Sequence record: OP380601.1
Strand: one strand, 5' to 3'
Length of the DNA stretch: 64,000 nt
In this document: positions 3,035-19,435 of the stretch, piece by piece
How the letters are laid out: each line of letters starts with the position of its first letter
Position numbering within the stretch: the first letter of the stretch is position 1
Position numbers and translations under genes: made by a program
The notes under the pieces: generated by a model
The model's input: only the letters and a program-made list of their open reading frames with translations
What the model was told of the DNA's origin: nothing
Database searches by the model: none

Positions 3035-3265
3035 AACGGGGACTATATCAAGCCAGTCAAAGCAAGATAAAGTCCCCGTTGTAATGCGCCCCTCTAGGTG
3101 AAGTTGAGAGACAACCTTTCGTGTTGTAGTAGGTCACACTACCCTCTAATAACGGGAAGCGTATGCGAGGTTATACGCCCTCTTTTCGTCTAGTGACTAT
3201 GTATGGTGTCACCACACCATTGACTACATAGTTTGACGCCGCTGGGGTATATTAATTACCCCTTA
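3035..3265 (-). ncRNA. candidate structured ncRNA A
   Basis: No ORF; six hairpins, including 10-bp perfect stem 3035-3044/3071-3080 and long stem 3196-3232. Confidence 0.45.
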
Positions 3266-3306
3266 CACTTAAAACCAATCCTCTTCGCGGATCATAAAAT
3301 GTCCTT

Positions 3307-3555
3307 TTAACTGTATTGATAACCGGAATTTGAACGTTTCTTTTCGTAATCGTCATCAACAAAAACGTCATGGTCGCCATGCAGAATGTCATGTTTCAAT
3401 TTGCGATCTCGTTGACGAGACAATACATTATATCGGTCTTTAACACCACTATCTGGACTTTTATTGTAATAATCTCCCAAGTCGCGGGTCACATCAATAC
3501 TATCGTACAATTCGTGGAGATGTTTTTCATTCTTACGGCGAACAGTTTTACCCAT
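3307..3555 (-). CDS. hypothetical protein
   Basis: 82-aa charged ORF with SD AGG. Confidence 0.55.
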   Translation of the reverse strand: MGKTVRRKNEKHLHELYDSIDVTRDLGDYYNKSPDSGVKDRYNVLSRQRDRKLKHDILHGDHDVFVDDDYEKKRSNSGYQYS

Positions 3556-10812: not shown

Positions 10813-10897
10813 TGGTGCTTGTGGAGGGATTCGAACCCTCAATCCCGTAGGCGGGAGATTTTAAGTCTCCTGTGTATGCCAGTTCCACCACACAAGC
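10813..10897 (-). tRNA. tRNA-Leu(TAA)
   Basis: CTTAAAA loop, variable arm, TTCGAAT, CCA; isolated from the main cluster. Confidence 0.95.
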
Positions 10898-10952: not shown

Positions 10953-11966
10953 TTAAAAAGTTTTTACGTTTAGAAGATTCTTCTTGACCCGAGTTTCAAT
11001 CTGGTCTACAGATTCGGAATTGTGAGTTTTTAGATCTTTTACAAGATTAGCCATAACATCCATATTTTCATGAGTCTCAATCTCATAAATCGATGCAGTA
11101 ACAGACCAACGTTTTTTATCTCCGGTTCGACCTGAGACGTTCCAAATTCCTTTTCTCATCCATGTCATACGACTGAAGTATAAAACAGAACCATTACCTA
11201 AGTCAATAGCGTAATCGTCTCCACCAAGATTTCTTCCCTCAAGTTCTTTCTTGACAAAGAGAACATAATCTGCTTTCTTAAGGGGTTTTACTTTCTTGTC
11301 ACTGGCAAAAGCTTTTTTCAGTTTAGTTTCTGGAAAAAGAACTTTCGGATCTTTCATGAACTTTTCAGTTTCAGAACGATTATAATTTTTCTGAGTCATT
11401 TTAACTTTCTTACGGTCAATCATAACCTCAGTAGTCACACCCATATCACTAAGTTCCGGCTTGTCAAACCCAGCACCAAGAGCTTTAGTAATAAAGATGG
11501 TAGCCATCGCAGTCATATCAAAGAATACCGTATTATCATCAGAGGTAAACTTATAATCAACCGCTACAAAATTCCCGATGGACGGGGATTTGATCTGGCG
11601 TTCAAAAAGGAATTTCTTCCCTGCCATCTTTTCAAAGTAAGCCAGATATGCTTGTGTGTCGAAAAATTTATCAAACATATGAGTGACGAAGTTTAGAATA
11701 ACTTGCTTTTCTTCTTTACTCTTAGCCTGTCTATCCTGAAACGACATTTCTTTTTCTGCACCAGACTTACCCTTTAGAGCCTCGTATGCAGTATTGATAT
11801 CTTGCATTTTTTCTGTAGAACCACCACGATCTGGATGGTTATTTTTTGCAGCTTTACGATAAGCAGCCTTTAGGTCTTCCTCTGTAAATCTAGAGGACAA
11901 TCCCAAGGTTTTCATGGCTACAGATTGAGCTACAGACTCAAAAAGTTCCGAGAAGGTTTTAGACAT
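10953..11966 (-). CDS. J-domain (DnaJ-like) protein; likely start MSKTF at 11966
   Basis: LGL...EDLKAAYRKAAKNNHPDRGGSTEKMQDINTAYEAL contains the HPD motif; SD AGGA; late promoter at 11989-11995. Confidence 0.85.
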   Translation of the reverse strand: MSKTFSELFESVAQSVAMKTLGLSSRFTEEDLKAAYRKAAKNNHPDRGGSTEKMQDINTAYEALKGKSGAEKEMSFQDRQAKSKEEKQVILNFVTHMFDKFFDTQAYLAYFEKMAGKKFLFERQIKSPSIGNFVAVDYKFTSDDNTVFFDMTAMATIFITKALGAGFDKPELSDMGVTTEVMIDRKKVKMTQKNYNRSETEKFMKDPKVLFPETKLKKAFASDKKVKPLKKADYVLFVKKELEGRNLGGDDYAIDLGNGSVLYFSRMTWMRKGIWNVSGRTGDKKRWSVTASIYEIETHENMDVMANLVKDLKTHNSESVDQIETRVKKNLLNVKTF

Positions 11967-12050
11967 TTTTATTTTCCTTGTAAAGCTGTATTTAGGGAAC
12001 ATGTGTATGATATCAACATAGAATACTAAAATCAACACATTTCTAAAATA

Positions 12051-13108: not shown

Positions 13109-13669
13109 TCATCTTATGGATGGATGGAACGAAGGGGTTCCTACCTGTTCTGTCTTTGGTAAGATCTCTACACCATTATTACCAGATAACAATGAAAAAG
13201 ATGAATATCCAAATGATACCATACTGAACAAAGCTGGGTTTCCTTCCTCAGTATACCCCATTTCCAATTCGTCTATAGAATATGGAAATGGGTTGTTTAA
13301 TTTCATAGTCATCACTATCTTACGTTTATGGTTATCCAGTATATGAATTAGCATAGACATTGGTCGCATACCAGGCAAGTGTGCGGTTGAGTTAAACGAT
13401 CTACTGTCTGTGATGGAAATTATCCACTGATATATTTCCTGATAAGATTTAAATTCTTCATCAATTAAAAATCTAATTCTTACGGGTTCGTAATTAATTT
13501 TAGAACCCGGCATCATTCCCATACCCATTTGATTGGTACTAACCCTCGACAATTCCATTTCAATAGACGGAAGAGTAACGGATTGAGCAGAACTAACAAA
13601 ATGAACAGTAGTGTTTGCGTCTGGGATTTCCAGACGCATATTTGTAATGTGTGCTTGATTTGTTATCAT
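13109..13669 (-). CDS. gp3: tail tube terminator
   Basis: LEIPD...QSVTLPSI...GSKINYEPVRIRFLIDEEFKSYQEIYQW; position in the tail module. Confidence 0.9.
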   Translation of the reverse strand: MITNQAHITNMRLEIPDANTTVHFVSSAQSVTLPSIEMELSRVSTNQMGMGMMPGSKINYEPVRIRFLIDEEFKSYQEIYQWIISITDSRSFNSTAHLPGMRPMSMLIHILDNHKRKIVMTMKLNNPFPYSIDELEMGYTEEGNPALFSMVSFGYSSFSLLSGNNGVEILPKTEQVGTPSFHPSIR

Positions 13670-15474
13670 GATAACGGTTGTACTCCATATGACCCGATAG
13701 GTTGTTCTGCGTTATAAGGACCGAACCCAGAAGGAAGAACAGAACTCATAGCGTTATAGGTAGTATTATGCAAAGCGGCATATTCCGCTCCTATTCTACG
13801 GGAAGCCATTTCTTCTTTTTCTGCGTTTACTTTCTTCCTATATTCTTCAACCTTCTTATTACTTTCTTCGATTCGTTGTGATTGTGCTTTATCTTCACCT
13901 GACCGGATCACCGGCTCTATTTTAGATTCAGATGCTTCAGCTTCACCGAAACCAAAGAAGTTTCCAACGGCGGAAGCCCCTTCACTAAGCATAGCTTTCC
14001 CTTTATCAACTACATCGGGATTATCTGCCAAATAACTACCGATCTCATATAGGGTTAAAGCGGTTCCTACAAATGGAATCATTCTAAGACCGACTTTAGC
14101 AGCAACCTTTACAGCACCACTAGAAGCAACTTTCTTAAATAGACTCTCCCCCGCGACCTCAACACCTTTCTTTCCAAGCTTTTTAGCAGCCACATCTTTA
14201 GCAGCTTCTTTACCCAAAGTCTTTCCTGCATCTTTTGGTATCCTATCAGCAGGACCACTGGGTTTCGGTTGTGTTGTTGATGGTGTTGGTTGTTTCTTAC
14301 CATTAACATCGGGGGATGTTGATGTTGGGGTTTTAGTTGTTTTCTTAGGATCTGGACTACTAGTTTTAGGAGTACCGGTCGGTTTCTTTATACCGAATAG
14401 TCCTTTTGCTAGATCCAAAAACTTAGTCATCGCTCCTGATATAGCAAGACCTATTGCACCCGCCAATCCACCTAGTGTTGCCATCAATGCAGGAATAGAA
14501 CCCGCAAGACTCATCAATATCCCACCAATAGGAAGAAGAAAACCTAATAGCTTACTGAATATCATAGACATTTGAAACGCTTTTAACCATTTCATCAATC
14601 CACCAAAACGCTTTTCACTCTTATCACGTTCTTGCTTATTCTCATCTCTATCTTTTTTCTTATTGGCGTTTTCCCGTTCTTCTTTTACTTTTTCTTCGGG
14701 GGATCCTGAGTTTGTTGGGATTTGGTTGAATTTAGAAACTGCGTCAGCCTTCTTCTCTGAATAAGCCTTTGATGCCCTTTCATCTAGATTCTTTTCCTTA
14801 CGTGCGTTGTGTGCGTCAAGAACTGCCCCACCTACAAACTTAGAAGCATTAGACACCTGTTGAAAACCGGGAATAGTTGACAATATATCATTAATGGTTC
14901 CTGTGATCATACCGACACCGGCACTCATAGTATGACCAAGAATTTTAGCAGTTGCGGAAGTCTCAGAGTTTTTCATTCTACCAACAATATTTGCCTTTGA
15001 AGCAACATCACGAATGAATTTTCCAGTCTTTCCATTTTCCTTTTTGAATTCTTCTATGAATTCATCTTTAGTTCCAATCTCCCTTTTAATAAATTCTTCT
15101 AGAGTTTCCCGTGTATCTTCCGGTACTGTATTTGGAGATTCAGGAGAAGTATGATCTACTAAAGGCTGTTGTCTATTTAGAATATCACTAAGATACTTGC
15201 GTCTTTCTTCGTCAAACCCATCTTCAGATTTATCTCGGGCCTTTATATTCTTTCTACTCTTTTTTAATTGAGTTGCAAGCTTTTCTTGCTCTTGTGCAAC
15301 TTGTATAGAAGAATCAGAATTAATATCATAGGCTGCGGTTAAATCCGTTGTTGTTTTGGCTAGTACCCCAGATTTATCATCTAGGGTCAACATAGAATCC
15401 GTAACGATATTCATAGACTCAACTACATCATTTACTGATGCAGTTAGTTCCCGTGATTGTTTATCGTTAATCAT
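13666..15474 (-). CDS. gp29: baseplate hub / tape measure protein
   Basis: 602 aa (about T4 gp29 size), helical and charged, central hydrophobic stretch, P/T/K-rich linker; between gene 3 and genes 26/51. Confidence 0.7.
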   Translation of the reverse strand: MINDKQSRELTASVNDVVESMNIVTDSMLTLDDKSGVLAKTTTDLTAAYDINSDSSIQVAQEQEKLATQLKKSRKNIKARDKSEDGFDEERRKYLSDILNRQQPLVDHTSPESPNTVPEDTRETLEEFIKREIGTKDEFIEEFKKENGKTGKFIRDVASKANIVGRMKNSETSATAKILGHTMSAGVGMITGTINDILSTIPGFQQVSNASKFVGGAVLDAHNARKEKNLDERASKAYSEKKADAVSKFNQIPTNSGSPEEKVKEERENANKKKDRDENKQERDKSEKRFGGLMKWLKAFQMSMIFSKLLGFLLPIGGILMSLAGSIPALMATLGGLAGAIGLAISGAMTKFLDLAKGLFGIKKPTGTPKTSSPDPKKTTKTPTSTSPDVNGKKQPTPSTTQPKPSGPADRIPKDAGKTLGKEAAKDVAAKKLGKKGVEVAGESLFKKVASSGAVKVAAKVGLRMIPFVGTALTLYEIGSYLADNPDVVDKGKAMLSEGASAVGNFFGFGEAEASESKIEPVIRSGEDKAQSQRIEESNKKVEEYRKKVNAEKEEMASRRIGAEYAALHNTTYNAMSSVLPSGFGPYNAEQPIGSYGVQPLS

Positions 15475-15650
15475 TTATTACCCTCGTTCGCCGCTTCTTT
15501 TAGTTCATTCAAATATAGATGAACATATATACCAAATTCGAACGGAGTCATTTCTTCAAGATCGGAATGACTCCATCCATCTTTTCGTAACTTATAAACT
15601 GTATTAAAGTGGTCGAATATTGTATTATTAACGAGGGTTAAGCGAAAAAA
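15471..15650 (-). CDS. gp51: gp51-like tail assembly chaperone C-domain; no start codon, predicted to be reached by -1 frameshift from gp26
   Basis: FFRLTLVNNTIFDHFNTVYKLRKDGWSHSDLEEMTPFEFGIYVHLYLNELKEAANEGNK resembles the T4 gp51 C-terminus; TGA overlaps the gp29 ATG. Confidence 0.7.
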   Translation of the reverse strand, partial: FFRLTLVNNTIFDHFNTVYKLRKDGWSHSDLEEMTPFEFGIYVHLYLNELKEAANEGNK

Positions 15651-16417
15651 CTAGCTACCCCCGTAAGAGTTACGATCTCTTCATGCCCACATTTTTTACA
15701 GCGTACTGGTATATTTAGGGAATGTTGAGGGATACCGGTAACAAAACTACTCATTTTAATGATAGCCTTATCATCTACATATTCCATTATCTCCCCTACA
15801 TCCTCATAAGGAAGGTCAATACCGGGTTTTACTATATCATTACCCATATGAACTTCATCGATACAACGAACGATAAGATTAAAAAGGTCGGATTCCTTCT
15901 GTACGTTGAAATATTCCATCTCACTAATATTTGGATATCTCATAAATACTATAAGATCATCGTTAAGAACTATTTTTCTATCAGGAGCTTCAGTAAGTCT
16001 AGAGCTATTCAAGTTTATATTAACTTTAATCTCGTTCCCACACTTAGCAATTTCACCATATTGGTCATAGGTAACATTACCTTCTTCATCTAAAATCTCG
16101 TTTGCACAAGTAAACATAGCTGGAATGATTGGAGAAGCTTTAGAAAGCTTATATAACGCCAAATATATAGATTCGAGATCGAATATAGGAAGTGTTTCAA
16201 CATCGATATCTTTGGTTAGAACACAGTTTTTAACTATTTGAATAATAGCTTCTTCAATACCTACACCAGCTTCGTTTGCTAACATTAGAAGTTTCATTTC
16301 TTTCATTACGAAAGCTCTAATAAGAATCTCTCTACCATCAGATAAAGTTAGTTTAGTCTGTTGTACAGTTTTTTGAATGGCTGCAAGTAAAACACTTTTA
16401 TCAATTTTAGTTGTCAT
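15638..16417 (-). CDS. gp26: baseplate hub assembly protein; likely start MTTKID at 16417
   Basis: IRAFVMKE, FMRYP, IPVRCKKCG...GVASFF as in T4 gp26; late promoter at 16450-16456. Confidence 0.85.
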   Translation of the reverse strand: MTTKIDKSVLLAAIQKTVQQTKLTLSDGREILIRAFVMKEMKLLMLANEAGVGIEEAIIQIVKNCVLTKDIDVETLPIFDLESIYLALYKLSKASPIIPAMFTCANEILDEEGNVTYDQYGEIAKCGNEIKVNINLNSSRLTEAPDRKIVLNDDLIVFMRYPNISEMEYFNVQKESDLFNLIVRCIDEVHMGNDIVKPGIDLPYEDVGEIMEYVDDKAIIKMSSFVTGIPQHSLNIPVRCKKCGHEEIVTLTGVASFFA

Positions 16418-16492
16418 TTTTAATAATTCCTGTTTAAATGGTCTAAACGTATTTAGGCATTGTATCATACTGATCAGATCCTCATGAACTTT

Positions 16493-16696
16493 TAGTTTCA
16501 ATTGAAATCAAATTATAAAGTTCTATAATATATTAATAGAGACTTTACACTTAGAATAAAATCGATATCGCCTCTGGCGCGGGCAAAGCCCGATACTAGT
16601 TTTACAAATGATAAAGATTGTCATTTAGACCTTTCAAATTATAAAGTTCTATAATATATTAATAGAAACTTTATAATTTGATTTCAATTGAAACTA
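16493..16696. repeat. 204-bp AT-rich element with perfect 30-bp terminal inverted repeats and two palindromic cores
   Basis: TAGTTTCAATTGAAATCAAATTATAAAGTT at 16493-16522 is the exact reverse complement of 16667-16696. Confidence 0.85.
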
Positions 16697-16833: not shown

Positions 16834-17781
16834 CTATCGGATTGCTTTTAGAACTCCGGTAGTTCTTCTTACAATAGATTCAATCGAATCAATACCAGTT
16901 TCTTTACCTTCAGTTGGCATATGAACTGTGGTTGCAACTGCAAAAGTTACTGTAAACGTCGCTATTTGAGAATTGTTCTCAAAGTCAAGTTGAACCTCAC
17001 CAACCTCGATTGGAAAACATCCAGTATTATGTACTGTTGATCTTTTCACACCATGACGATCAAGGGTGATTATGTCTATTGGCTTTGCATATTGTTGGTA
17101 AAAACCAAATCTTCCGTTACTTGGGTTAACTATTGTATTTTGCCACGTTAGCATTAATGAACGTTCCTCATAACCGGGCGAGCAATAAAAAGTCATAGTC
17201 ATAGTCCCATAGTTTCGTCCCTTTACTTCGTGTCTAGGCAACTTATCTATTCGGTTAATCGTGGTTTCCAATGTAGAACTAGGAAGTCCAACACTCTTAA
17301 CCATTAACGCCAAGTCTTTATTTACATCGTAATCAGTTCCTAAGAAACCATCCAATATATCTCCGGCTCCAGGAATGATTTTAATAAGAGATGGATCCCA
17401 AGCACCAAATATCTTTTTCATACTTGGAGTAAGAACTTTATGGGCTTCCCCTAAAGCCATATCTTGTATCCTATGCCAAGTATACGAACTTCCAGAAAAC
17501 AATCCACCATTAACGTCAGGACTATTTGTATCTGGAAATATAGGTAAATCCATATTAAAAACCCCGTCATTATATAACGTAGATCTAAAATCTTCAAATC
17601 TAACAATAAACATATTGGCTCTTGCTAGATCTGAGTTTTCTACCTTTCTCATAAATCTAGTTAAATCGGGGATTTCGTTAGAATCCCCCTCATCAAGAAA
17701 ATTATTTATTGTATCTTCGCCAAATCCAATAGCACTATTTATCATGCTGTCGATTGACGGTATCGGTGGTATTAATGACAT
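16834..17781 (-). CDS. gp54: baseplate tail tube initiator
   Basis: DLARANMFIVRF, LALMVKSVGLP, FPIEVGEVQLDFENNSQIATFTVTFA. Confidence 0.9.
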   Translation of the reverse strand: MSLIPPIPSIDSMINSAIGFGEDTINNFLDEGDSNEIPDLTRFMRKVENSDLARANMFIVRFEDFRSTLYNDGVFNMDLPIFPDTNSPDVNGGLFSGSSYTWHRIQDMALGEAHKVLTPSMKKIFGAWDPSLIKIIPGAGDILDGFLGTDYDVNKDLALMVKSVGLPSSTLETTINRIDKLPRHEVKGRNYGTMTMTFYCSPGYEERSLMLTWQNTIVNPSNGRFGFYQQYAKPIDIITLDRHGVKRSTVHNTGCFPIEVGEVQLDFENNSQIATFTVTFAVATTVHMPTEGKETGIDSIESIVRRTTGVLKAIR

Positions 17782-18776
17782 TAGTATGAACTCCAAACTT
17801 TATTAGTATTGAAGGTCTTAGATTCGGGGCCAGTAACAAAGCGTTGTGTTGGAAGATTAATAACAGAACTCCAATCCTGCGGTTTAATTTCCATAAACGG
17901 CCCTCTTACATGATTAGGCAAATATGCTTTGATCATATGGTCTGCACCCTTCATTCCTCGAACCTTTCCCCAATTTATATTTAGGGATGTTCTGTTAGTA
18001 ATTCGTTCTGTAGTTGCATGTTTAAGAAGTTCTTCCATAAATTCTTTACGGGCTTTCACTGGAATATAATGTAGGTTAAGACCCATCATCATACCCTTAT
18101 GTTTACGACTTTCACCCAAGTATACAATTAGTGGAAACTTATCCCAATATGGTAACGTTGCTTTATGTTTTGCATCATACGCAAATGTATATAGTCTCCC
18201 TGCTACCGGTTTGGTTACCTTATGACCACGAACATTTTTCTTTATGAATCCACTAAACCACTCTATAGATTTTCTTTCAGATTTTTGAGGTTCTTTCTCA
18301 AACTGTCTAACCTTACTTCTAAAGTCTTGTAATAATAGTTGATATTTCTCGCCACTAGTCAATTTTTTATTTGATAGTTTTGCATCTTTTAACTTCTTAG
18401 CAAGGATTATATCGTTTTTGAATCTTCGGAATGCCCGTTCTGCGGTTTCTTTGTTAAGCCCACTACGTTCAATATATTCTTTCTGGGTTATGCCAGATTT
18501 TTCTTTCTTAGTAAGATAATCTAACCCAAGTTCAACCCATTGTTCTTTGGTCTTGTTTGGATTGGTAAGAGAGTAATATTTTTTAATATCGTCTCTATAT
18601 CGTCTCATAGCACGGCTAAAAGTCTCATAGTTCAATCCTTTCTCTTCTGCATACTTCTTGGCAGTAATACCGGATTTTTTACGAGTTTCCATATAGTCTG
18701 AACCTATTCCGATCCAGTCTCGTTTTCTTCTTTTCTCTGCGGGAGTTTCTTCCCTTTCATTAAGTTCAAAAATCAT
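17781..18776 (-). CDS. gp2: DNA end protector protein
   Basis: GRLYTFAYDAKHKATLPYWDKFPLIVYLG...GLNLHYIP. Confidence 0.95.
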   Translation of the reverse strand: MIFELNEREETPAEKRRKRDWIGIGSDYMETRKKSGITAKKYAEEKGLNYETFSRAMRRYRDDIKKYYSLTNPNKTKEQWVELGLDYLTKKEKSGITQKEYIERSGLNKETAERAFRRFKNDIILAKKLKDAKLSNKKLTSGEKYQLLLQDFRSKVRQFEKEPQKSERKSIEWFSGFIKKNVRGHKVTKPVAGRLYTFAYDAKHKATLPYWDKFPLIVYLGESRKHKGMMMGLNLHYIPVKARKEFMEELLKHATTERITNRTSLNINWGKVRGMKGADHMIKAYLPNHVRGPFMEIKPQDWSSVINLPTQRFVTGPESKTFNTNKVWSSY

Positions 18777-19435
18777 TATAATTTCCTCATTTTACAATTA
18801 TCAAAATGGTGTCTAACCATGGGAGATTTTGCACCAACTTTCCCACAATGAGGACATGTAACCTTTGGGTTACTCTTTAACTTCTCTGATATCAATTTTC
18901 TACATTTTTCTGTATGTACTATACCAGACATATATTCTTTTGCTGCATTTATTTGGTTTATATGTCCTGACTTACCTAATCTGGATTGTCGGATCTTTTC
19001 CTTTACTTCTGGTGTATGTGTTTTCCCGTAAAAATGATTTTTATCACCATTAACATCTCTTTTACGTTGAGCCAAACGCATTTTATCTAAAGTTTCTTTA
19101 GATATTTTACGATGTTTCATTCTATTTGATGTTTCTTTAGAATATTTTTCTCTCAACCAACCAAATAATTTATTATTTGATCTTCGTTCGTCATTACATA
19201 AAACTGCCATACATCTCGCTGCATAAATTATTTTACCCTCATTTGGGTATATCTTAACTAACAATTGATGAGCGAGATAATGTTCTTCTGGTGTTAATAT
19301 TGCTATATTACTTTTATCGTCAGAACCTCCCATACATTTTGGTACAATATGATGTTTCTCTTTATATTGTTCTTTTGGAATGATTCTATTAAATGACCTA
19401 TTTATTAGGTCATCGTATATTTTATGATAGTTCAT
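18776..19435 (-). mobile_element. free-standing HNH homing endonuclease (NUMOD3-type repeats, C-terminal CPHC)
   Basis: EKHHIVPKCMGGSDDKSN...LTPEEHYLAH; NHFYGKTHTPEVKEKIRQSRLGK. Confidence 0.9.

What the first reader, a model, noticed from the sequence alone, without database searches (positions are those of the whole stretch)
15471..15660. Predicted -1 ribosomal frameshift fusing gp26 to a start-less gp51 domain just before the tape-measure gene (lambda G/GT-like logic in a T4-type tail)
Seen: gp26 ends AGT TTT TTC GCT TAA, giving the slippery heptamer T TTT TTC at 15644-15650 in the gp26 frame. The -1 frame is closed by TAG just before the heptamer. It then runs 59 codons (FFRLTLVNNTIFDHFNTVYKLRKDGWSHSDLEEMTPFEF...NK) with no ATG/GTG/TTG until two-thirds of the way through, and its TGA overlaps the gp29 ATG. 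A small hairpin TTAAC-CCTC-GTTAA follows the slip site. Known: the peptide resembles the T4 gp51 C-terminus (..[36 protein letters not shown]..), and lambda G/GT, P2 E/E' and Mu tail chaperones are made by -1 frameshifting immediately upstream of the tape-measure gene. Inference: gp26 and gp26-51 are this phage's G/GT pair. I am not aware of this being described for T4-like tails.
Basis: partly seen in the sequence, partly recalled or inferred. Interest (0 to 1): 0.85.

Follow-up and report, generated by a model that had tools for sequence, protein, structure and literature searches.

The report
Tail-chaperone frameshift in T4-like phage
A run of T's at the end of the gp26 gene of this Aeromonas T4-like phage very probably lets some ribosomes slip back one base and make a longer, gp51-like form of the tail-assembly chaperone; the signal is real and deeply conserved, but it was already described for T4-like phages in 2022.

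Summary
The window is Aeromonas phage avDM6 (100% identity); the genes lie on the minus strand. The gp26-family ORF ends with T TTT TTC, one more codon, then a stop. A 59-codon -1 ORF is closed just upstream, has no canonical start before codon 34, and ends on the start codon of the next large gene.

The heptamer alone is not significant (18 copies in the window, about 30 expected). Comparison is decisive. In 91 junctions from Aeromonas, Vibrio, Cronobacter, Rhizobium, Xanthomonas and cyanophage genomes and from 80 metagenomic contigs (26-31% protein identity), the heptamer is in phase in every one. The -1 ORF is homologous in 78 of 78 contigs with enough DNA.

T4 itself encodes the two forms as paralogous genes: 26 (short, non-slippery Phe codons) and 51 (long, with the same extension in frame).

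So the lambda G/GT-like reading is supported. The small hairpin is not. The tape-measure identity of the downstream gene is inferred only. The idea is not new: Vladimirov, Gautam and Davidson (Virology 2022) identified these genes as the T4-like tail assembly chaperones. None of the 15 such GenBank records examined annotates the joined product.

The parts
15638..16417 (-). gp26-family ORF, the short form (TAC-N). It is 259 aa from the ATG annotated in avDM6. The frame is open upstream to a TTG at 16501.
   Evidence: Pfam PF12322 T4_baseplate 3e-50, covering the model to its last position. phrog_150 'baseplate hub' 4e-55. BLASTP to T4 gp26 1e-14. AF2 model pLDDT 84. BFVD matches to baseplate hub subunits and hub assembly chaperones.
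15644..15650 (-). Slippery heptamer T TTT TTC in X XXY YYZ phase of the gp26 frame.
   Evidence: In 83 distinct related junctions the first six columns are T in 100%; the seventh is C 82%, T 16%, A 2%. The first T is a third codon position behind varying codons (AGT, GAT, AAT, GCT, TCT, GGT).
15638..15640 (-). 0-frame stop (TAA), one codon after the heptamer.
   Evidence: The stop is exactly one codon after the heptamer in 70 of 80 metagenomic relatives, and 0-3 codons after it in the rest.
15471..15650 (-). -1 frame ORF: 59 sense codons plus TGA. It is the gp51-like C-terminal extension of the long form (TAC-NC).
   Evidence: phrog_634 2e-12 and phrog_150 profile positions 231-281, collinear with gp26 on positions 8-232. 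Homologous -1 ORFs in 56 phage records and in 78 of 78 metagenomic loci with enough DNA. Aligns to T4 gp51 residues 200-243.
15651..15653 (-). TAG that closes the -1 frame directly upstream of the heptamer.
   Evidence: In relatives the -1 frame opens 0-33 codons before the heptamer, median 6.
15656..15664 (-). G-rich Shine-Dalgarno-like stretch 7-8 nt upstream of the heptamer. It is a possible stimulator (inferred).
   Evidence: Best anti-SD duplex upstream of the site, -10 kcal/mol. A family-wide peak sits at the same place. The Glu codon there is GAG in 42 of 66 against 27% elsewhere in the same ORFs.
15628..15641 (-). It contains the 0-frame stop and is judged not functional.
   Evidence: -1.1 kcal/mol, z +0.5. 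It starts 3 nt after the heptamer. No Rfam match.
13666..15474 (-). 602-aa ORF whose ATG overlaps the -1 ORF stop. Probable tape measure protein (inferred).
   Evidence: phrog_11300, unknown function. Not demonstrably homologous to T4 gp29. Central hydrophobic segment at 302-348, like T4 gp29 227-258, and no Cys. Lies between the chaperone gene and gp3.
16834..17796 (-). gp54-like tail tube initiator, upstream neighbour.
   Evidence: phrog_45 4e-44, Pfam PF06841. Annotated gp54 in phage 65.
13109..13669 (-). gp3-like tail tube terminator, second gene downstream.
   Evidence: Annotated in avDM6 and phage 65. phrog_45 2e-31.

Best explanation
The gp26-family gene of this phage is its tail assembly chaperone gene, and it is decoded in two ways.

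Most ribosomes read through T TTT TTC, add one more residue and stop, giving the 259-aa short form. A minority slip back one base while the two Phe-tRNAs sit on the heptamer. They then read 57 further codons in the -1 frame and stop on the start codon of the next gene. This gives a long form of about 315 aa, whose extra domain matches the in-frame C-terminal extension of T4 gp51.

By analogy with lambda G/GT, the shared part would coat the tape-measure-like 602-aa protein encoded next. The extension would recruit tube or hub parts. Neither form would remain in the virion.

Shown: the sequence anatomy, its conservation, the homologies, and the two-gene arrangement in T4. Inferred: that the shift is ribosomal, its efficiency, the chaperone role, and the partner proteins.
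For: (1) Anatomy at the stated coordinates.

(2) Conservation in annotated phages. The heptamer in phase, a nearby 0-frame stop and a homologous -1 ORF occur in all 10 annotated relatives first fetched, spanning several Straboviridae genera and Kyanoviridae, while the flanking codons and the stop codons vary. The same holds in KVP40, Rhizobium LG08 and Xanthomonas X1.

(3) Survey unbiased for the junction. It was seeded on an N-terminal motif. 80 of 80 IMG/VR loci at 26-31% identity carry T TTT TTY/A. 78 of 78 with enough DNA carry a -1 ORF (median 65 codons) matching the extension profile. The +1 frame runs a median of 10 codons with 0 matches.

(4) Constraint at the nucleotide level. The first T is a synonymous or variable third position, yet it is T in 100% of junctions. 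The first Phe codon is TTT in 87 of 87 against 70% usage elsewhere in the same ORFs.

(5) Natural control. T4, STP4-a and a Klebsiella phage have a separate gene 51. Their gp26 encodes the same Phe-Phe with non-slippery codons, and their -1 frame is closed.

(6) T4 gp26 and gp51 both match PF12322 over the full length, and gp51 carries the extension in frame.

(7) avDM6 holds only one gp26-family place by tblastn, and the window holds no gp51 homologue.

(8) Literature. The T4 tail review lists gp26 and gp51 as hub assembly chaperones (PMC3004832). Vladimirov et al. 2022 is cited for short and long TAC forms, and for poly-T -1 signals in the TAC-N genes of T4-like phages.
Against: There is no expression data for any product.

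No significant downstream RNA structure exists in this lineage.

The fold link to solved tail assembly chaperones is weak: HK97 TAC 2ob9 has probability 0.54-0.63 and E about 0.5-1.

The downstream gene is not demonstrably a gp29 homologue.

About a third of relatives have an ATG within the first 6 codons of the -1 ORF. An Ackermannviridae relative has an ATG overlapping the stop. So separate initiation is possible in some lineages.

[quoted passage not shown] I could not read the paper. One citing paper says this refers to the two-gene solution.
Confidence: 0.85

Rival explanations
1. The frame change is made by RNA polymerase slipping on the T-run (transcriptional slippage), so a fraction of mRNAs carry the extension in frame. 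The ribosome does not shift.
For: The site is a homopolymer run of 6 T's. It is 7-9 T's in a minority of relatives. The title of Vladimirov et al. [quoted passage not shown]
Against: The run is extended on its 5' side in 100% of junctions but on its 3' side in only 16%. That gives the X XXY YYZ phase rather than maximal run length. Six residues is short for efficient polymerase slippage (general knowledge). The commonest slippage product, one added base, would lead into the +1 frame, which closes after a median of 10 codons. PRFect's summary says the 'other mechanism' is two separate genes.
Confidence: 0.07
2. The small ORF is a separate gene. It is translated on its own from an internal or non-canonical start, or by termination-reinitiation after gp26, giving a free gp51-like peptide.
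For: Annotators call it a separate ORF, for example 'baseplate hub assembly catalyst' in phiAS5, PX29, S-RSM4 and S-SZBM1. Vibrio phage VP-1 (Ackermannviridae) has an ATG overlapping the gp26 stop and no full heptamer. 29 of 82 relatives have an ATG at codon 6.
Against: In the window the first canonical start is codon 34 of 59. That lies beyond the part that aligns to T4 gp51 200-232. The position of the first start ranges from codon 3 to 34 across relatives, whereas residues 1-3 and 8 of the -1 ORF are conserved in 74-100%. This rival does not explain the invariant heptamer. It also does not explain the collinearity with phrog_150 and with T4 gp51.
Confidence: 0.05
3. The frame change is an error or a decaying gene: a homopolymer sequencing error, or a pseudogene of an originally continuous gp51-like gene.
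For: Homopolymer runs are error-prone in sequencing. T4 gp51 shows that a continuous version exists.
Against: The same frame relation is seen in 91 independent genomes and contigs from different laboratories and platforms, at 26-100% identity, with both ORFs under evident protein-level conservation.
Confidence: 0.01

Closest known systems
T4-like tail assembly chaperones gp26 (TAC-N) and gp51 (TAC-NC), Vladimirov, Gautam & Davidson, Virology 2022 (doi 10.1016/j.virol.2021.11.003)
   Same: Same protein family (PF12322), the same short and long forms, and a poly-T -1 signal at the end of the short gene. The window's gene is an orthologue of T4 gp26, and its extension is homologous to the gp51 C-terminus.
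   Different: T4 and other Tevenvirinae encode the two forms as two diverged paralogous genes on opposite strands, without a slippery site. The window uses one gene. I could not read the paper, so I cannot say whether it covers the phage 65/avDM6 group, the upstream SD-like element or the fixed stop spacing.
Lambda gpG/gpGT (and P2 E/E', Mu gp41/42): the conserved tail assembly chaperone frameshift (Xu, Hendrix & Duda 2004; review PMC5009743)
   Same: A -1 shift near the 3' end of a small gene placed between the tube-type gene and a long tape-measure-like gene. It gives an abundant short form and a rare long form that share the N-terminal part (for the lambda model).
   Different: No detectable sequence similarity. 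Fold similarity to a solved chaperone of this class (HK97, 2ob9) is only weak. The protein is about twice as long. The heptamer is different. The downstream gene is not proven to be the tape measure.
Pakpunavirus/Vandenendeviridae and Andersonviridae TAC locus with a conserved GTTTTT motif (PMC12846349)
   Same: Myovirus chaperone gene with a poly-T -1 site, routinely mis-annotated as a gene plus a hypothetical ORF. The argument from uninterrupted -1 frames is the same.
   Different: A different protein family and a shorter motif, comparable to the GTT TTT seen in Vibrio phage VP-1.
E. coli dnaX -1 frameshift site
   Same: A heptamer with a Shine-Dalgarno-like element some 10 nt upstream (own knowledge). 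Here an SD-like G-rich stretch lies 7-10 nt upstream and shows a codon-choice bias.
   Different: dnaX also needs a strong downstream stem-loop, and its shifted product is the shorter one. Here there is no significant downstream structure in this lineage, and the shifted product is the longer one.

Membership tests
T4 gp26/gp51 family (Pfam PF12322 T4_baseplate; phrog_150) | Full-length match to the family profile | tested here: met
   PF12322 3.4e-50, residues 50-287 on model positions 5-219 of 219. phrog_150 4e-55. BFVD fold matches to E 1e-26.
T4 gp26/gp51 family (Pfam PF12322 T4_baseplate; phrog_150) | Long form carries the gp51-type C-terminal extension | tested here: met
   The -1 ORF matches phrog_634 at 2e-12 and phrog_150 positions 231-281. 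It aligns to T4 gp51 200-243. Each frame was searched separately.
Programmed -1 ribosomal frameshift site | X XXY YYZ heptamer in phase with the upstream frame | tested here: met
   T TTT TTC at 15650-15644 in phase. In phase in 91 of 91 relatives. U_UU.Y ranks second among tetramers in E. coli (PMC4066793).
Programmed -1 ribosomal frameshift site | Conserved, coding -1 ORF without a start of its own, open from the site | tested here: met
   59 codons, first start at codon 34. Homologous in 78 of 78 loci; +1 control gives 0. Start position not conserved.
Programmed -1 ribosomal frameshift site | Stimulatory element (downstream structure or upstream SD-like sequence) | tested here: inconclusive
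   Downstream: nothing significant in the window (z +0.5). Marine relatives have hairpins of -10 to -18 kcal/mol, but in differing registers and with no consensus fold. Upstream: an SD-like stretch with a GAG codon bias of 42/66 against 27%, confounded by a conserved Glu-Gly.
Programmed -1 ribosomal frameshift site | Two products detected | not testable with these tools
   No expression data available.
Tail assembly chaperone (lambda G/GT class) | Gene immediately upstream of the tape measure gene | tested here: inconclusive
   The downstream 602-aa ORF overlaps the -1 stop, has T4 gp29-like length and a central hydrophobic segment. It shows no significant homology to gp29 or to any named tape measure family. 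The cyanophage counterpart has weak tape-measure and M23 peptidase matches.
Tail assembly chaperone (lambda G/GT class) | Fold of solved chaperones of the class | tested here: inconclusive
   No PDB match at E <= 0.001. The highest-probability weak matches are HK97 TAC 2ob9 (prob 0.54-0.63, TM to target 0.43-0.51) and YqbN 3klu (prob 0.44). No sequence match to any solved structure.
Tail assembly chaperone (lambda G/GT class) | Needed for assembly but absent from the virion; binds the tape measure | not testable with these tools
   For T4, the review PMC3004832 lists gp26 and gp51 as hub assembly chaperones and says gp51 is not in the particle. Nothing is known for this phage.

The most novel reading that the evidence does not exclude
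Beyond what is published, the site may be a fixed three-part recoding cassette. Its parts would be an SD-like GAGG-type element 7-10 nt upstream, U UUU UUC, and a 0-frame stop exactly one codon downstream. Lineage-specific downstream hairpins would be added in marine phages. The cassette would be the ancestral state for Straboviridae, Kyanoviridae and related myoviruses. From it the T-even two-gene arrangement (26 and 51) would have arisen by duplication and loss of the slippery codons, and the Ackermannviridae stop-start overlap would be a third solution.
Probability: 0.3. Interest if true: 0.45.

Novelty: already known. Interest (0 to 1): 0.3.

Why it matters
The site explains why most T4-related genomes seem to lack gene 51: the gp51 equivalent is the frameshifted form of gp26. 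It ties the T4 hub 'catalyst' gp51 to the universal short-and-long chaperone logic of long-tailed phages.

In practice it is an annotation matter. None of the 15 frameshift-type GenBank records examined carries a joined CDS. The extension is either missing or called a hypothetical or 'assembly catalyst' mini-ORF from arbitrary internal starts.

The scientific idea itself was published in 2022, so this instance adds a member and some comparative detail, not a new principle.

Tried and rejected
1. It folds at -1.1 kcal/mol with z +0.5, and it starts 3 nt after the heptamer.

2. A single conserved downstream structure across marine relatives was not found. RNAalifold finds none. Two hand-set registers give about 60% paired cells with some covariation, but they disagree with each other.

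3. Rfam gives no match. There is no terminator between the ORFs.

4. Homology of the 602-aa protein to T4 gp29 was not found by BLASTP (E 0.016), hhalign (E 0.17), PHROGs, Pfam or NCBIfam.

5. Solved structures give no sequence match for either piece. The PDB fold search gives only weak chaperone-like matches.

6. The heptamer alone is not a significant signal; it is under-represented in the window rather than enriched.

7. Six literature searches on gp26/gp51/baseplate hub plus frameshift found nothing relevant. The prior art surfaced only through the PRFect paper's reference list, and the paper itself is not held.

Full report
IDENTITY AND CONTEXT

The window is Aeromonas phage avDM6 (OP380601.1, 100% identity; Straboviridae, Emmerichvirinae, Ishigurovirus). 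Phages 65 and 65.2 are about 91% identical.

The genes of interest are on the minus strand. Their order is gp4, an HNH endonuclease, gp2, gp54, the gp26-family gene, the small -1 ORF, a 602-aa ORF, gp3, then dNMP kinase. In avDM6 most of these are annotated 'hypothetical protein'. In phage 65 the small ORF is a 26-aa GeneMark call from its internal ATG.

OBSERVATION

- T TTT TTC at 15650-15644, in phase with the gp26 frame.
- One further codon, then TAA at 15640-15638.
- TAG at 15653-15651, closing the -1 frame just upstream.
- 59 open -1 codons (15650-15474), with the first canonical start at codon 34.
- TGA overlapping the ATG of the next gene.

Two caveats apply. The heptamer by itself is not unusual: 18 copies in the window against 30 +/- 5 expected. 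The small hairpin is not better than chance: -1.1 kcal/mol, z +0.5. No gene here is broken. The frame change is a conserved signal, not a lesion.

WHAT THE TWO PIECES ARE (each frame searched separately)

The 0-frame protein is a full-length member of Pfam PF12322 (T4_baseplate, 3e-50) and of phrog_150 'baseplate hub' (profile positions 8-232 of 282).

The -1 peptide matches phrog_634 'baseplate hub assembly catalyst' (2e-12). It also matches positions 231-281 of the same phrog_150 profile, so it is collinear with the 0-frame piece.

T4 was fetched by the accession printed in PMC2993671. In T4, gp26 (208 aa) and gp51 (249 aa) both match PF12322 over the full length. gp51 carries in frame a C-terminal stretch of about 48 aa that aligns to the window's -1 peptide: BLASTP 3e-4, hhalign 7e-5, gp51 residues 200-243.

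So T4 encodes a short and a long form of one protein family as two genes. Gene 51 heads the 51-27-28-29-48-54 operon. Gene 26 lies on the other strand.

COMPARATIVE TEST

tblastn with the -1 peptide finds 56 phage records. In all 10 loci first fetched the geometry is identical: the gp26 frame ends with the heptamer, one codon and a stop, and the homologous -1 ORF starts on the heptamer. These loci were Aeromonas CC2, phiAS5, Aeh1 and PX29; Cronobacter S13; Vibrio VmeM-32; and four cyanophages of Kyanoviridae. The flanking codons and the stop codons differ between them. KVP40, Rhizobium phage LG08 and Xanthomonas phage X1 show the same.

A second survey was unbiased for the junction, because it was seeded on an N-terminal motif. 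It returned 80 IMG/VR loci at 26-31% identity:
- 80 of 80 have the heptamer in phase (66 ending in C, 12 in T, 2 in A).
- The stop is one codon later in 70, and 0-3 codons later in the rest.
- 78 of 78 with enough DNA have a -1 ORF (median 65 codons) matching a profile of the extension.
- The +1 frame runs a median of 10 codons with no match.

By column over 83 distinct junctions, the first six heptamer positions are T in 100%. This includes the first, which is the third position of a codon that varies among six different codons. The first Phe codon is TTT in 87 of 87, against 70% TTT elsewhere in the same ORFs.

Natural controls: T4, Salmonella phage STP4-a and a Klebsiella phage have a separate gene 51. 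They encode the same Phe-Phe in gp26 with non-slippery codons, followed by three or four more codons, and their -1 frame is closed.

avDM6 has a single gp26-family place, and the window has no gp51 homologue.

This excludes sequencing error and a decaying gene. It also makes independent initiation unlikely for this phage, because the position of the first start in the -1 ORF ranges from codon 3 to 34 across relatives while the first residues are conserved.

MECHANISM

The best-supported model is tandem slippage of the two Phe-tRNAs on the heptamer.

U_UU.Y is the second most shift-prone tetramer class in E. coli (PMC4066793).

The run is always extended on the 5' side (100%) and rarely on the 3' side (16%). 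That fits the ribosomal X XXY YYZ rule better than polymerase slippage, which would favour run length regardless of phase.

A possible stimulator is a G-rich, SD-like stretch 7-10 nt upstream (15664-15656 in the window, -10 kcal/mol against the anti-SD probe). Family-wide there is an energy peak at that place. The Glu codon there is GAG in 42 of 66, against 27% elsewhere (p about 1e-9, not corrected for relatedness, and confounded by a conserved Glu-Gly).

Many marine relatives have downstream hairpins of -10 to -18 kcal/mol (z to -4.9). Their registers differ and no consensus fold emerges. The Aeromonas lineage has none.

FUNCTION

The T4 tail review lists gp26 and gp51 as hub assembly chaperones and notes that gp51 is required but absent from the particle (PMC3004832).

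The AF2 model of the window's short form is confident (pLDDT 84). It matches baseplate hub subunits and assembly chaperones of many myoviruses in BFVD. Against the PDB nothing is significant. The highest-probability weak matches are the HK97 tail assembly chaperone (2ob9) and YqbN (3klu).

The downstream 602-aa protein has T4 gp29-like length, a central hydrophobic segment and no cysteine. It has no demonstrable homology to gp29 or to any named tape measure family. Its role as tape measure is therefore an inference from position and composition.

PRIOR ART

A comprehensive recoding review of 2016 does not mention baseplate or T4-like cases in the portion held.

[quoted passage not shown] It summarises that some T4-like phages carry one short gene and one longer fused gene instead of frameshifting.

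PMC12846349 cites the same paper for poly-T -1 signals in the TAC-N genes of T4-like phages, and for the TAC-N/TAC-NC model.

The paper itself is not held, so I cannot say exactly which lineages and which details it covers. On this evidence the phenomenon is already known. The window holds an unannotated instance of it: 0 of the 15 frameshift-type records examined carry a joined CDS.

VERDICT

- Observation: confirmed.
- Interpretation: supported, except for the hairpin, the unproven gp29 label and the claim of novelty.
- Interest: modest.

Short textbook slippery motifs of other systems also came to mind while reasoning. The anti-SD energies rest on that typed probe. The codon-bias test does not.

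This report gives shares by column instead.

No sequence joined across the frame change was built, saved or searched.

Noticed in passing
L095 (Vibrio phage VP-1, Ackermannviridae) 3190-3400: The gp26-family gene ends GTT TTT CGC TAA, with an ATG overlapping the stop. So the homologous extension is a 58-aa ORF with its own start, and only a U_UUU tetramer is present rather than the full heptamer. This is a third way of making the extension, besides the frameshift and the T4 two-gene solution.
   Followed up: partly
L009-L093, about 5-45 nt after the heptamer: Many marine or cyanophage-type relatives have strong hairpins just downstream of the site (-10 to -18 kcal/mol, z to -4.9), with apparent compensatory changes. 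The pairing registers differ between sub-lineages, and RNAalifold gives no consensus.
   Followed up: partly
window 15656-15664 (-) and the same place in relatives: The Glu codon four codons before the heptamer is GAG in 42 of 66 relatives, against 27% GAG elsewhere in the same ORFs. This suggests selection for an SD-like element. It was not corrected for phylogeny.
   Followed up: partly
window 18776-19435 (-): A 219-aa HNH/Mob-like homing endonuclease ORF is inserted between gp4 and gp2. It is annotated as such in phage 65 and as hypothetical in avDM6.
   Followed up: no
window 17781-18776 (-): The gp2 DNA end protector (phrog_429, residues 135-331) carries an extra N-terminal region of about 130 aa with two HTH repeats. 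These match HTH DNA-binding and small-terminase-like families.
   Followed up: no
window 10813-10897 (-) and 10953-12038 (-): tRNA-Leu (anticodon TAA) lies next to an ORF with an N-terminal J-domain-like stretch. Phage 65's annotation notes the DnaJ similarity. The ORF boundaries differ between avDM6 and phage 65.
   Followed up: no
window 15638-16501 (-): The start of the gp26-family gene is annotated inconsistently: 259 aa in avDM6 and 229 aa in phage 65, while the frame is open to a TTG giving 287 aa. The Pfam match begins at residue 50 of the 287-aa reading.
   Followed up: no
alignment A1 (gp26 family): Aeromonas, Vibrio and T4 members keep Cys pairs resembling a zinc ribbon near the C-terminus (a weak Zn_ribbon match). 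The cyanophage members lack them.
   Followed up: no
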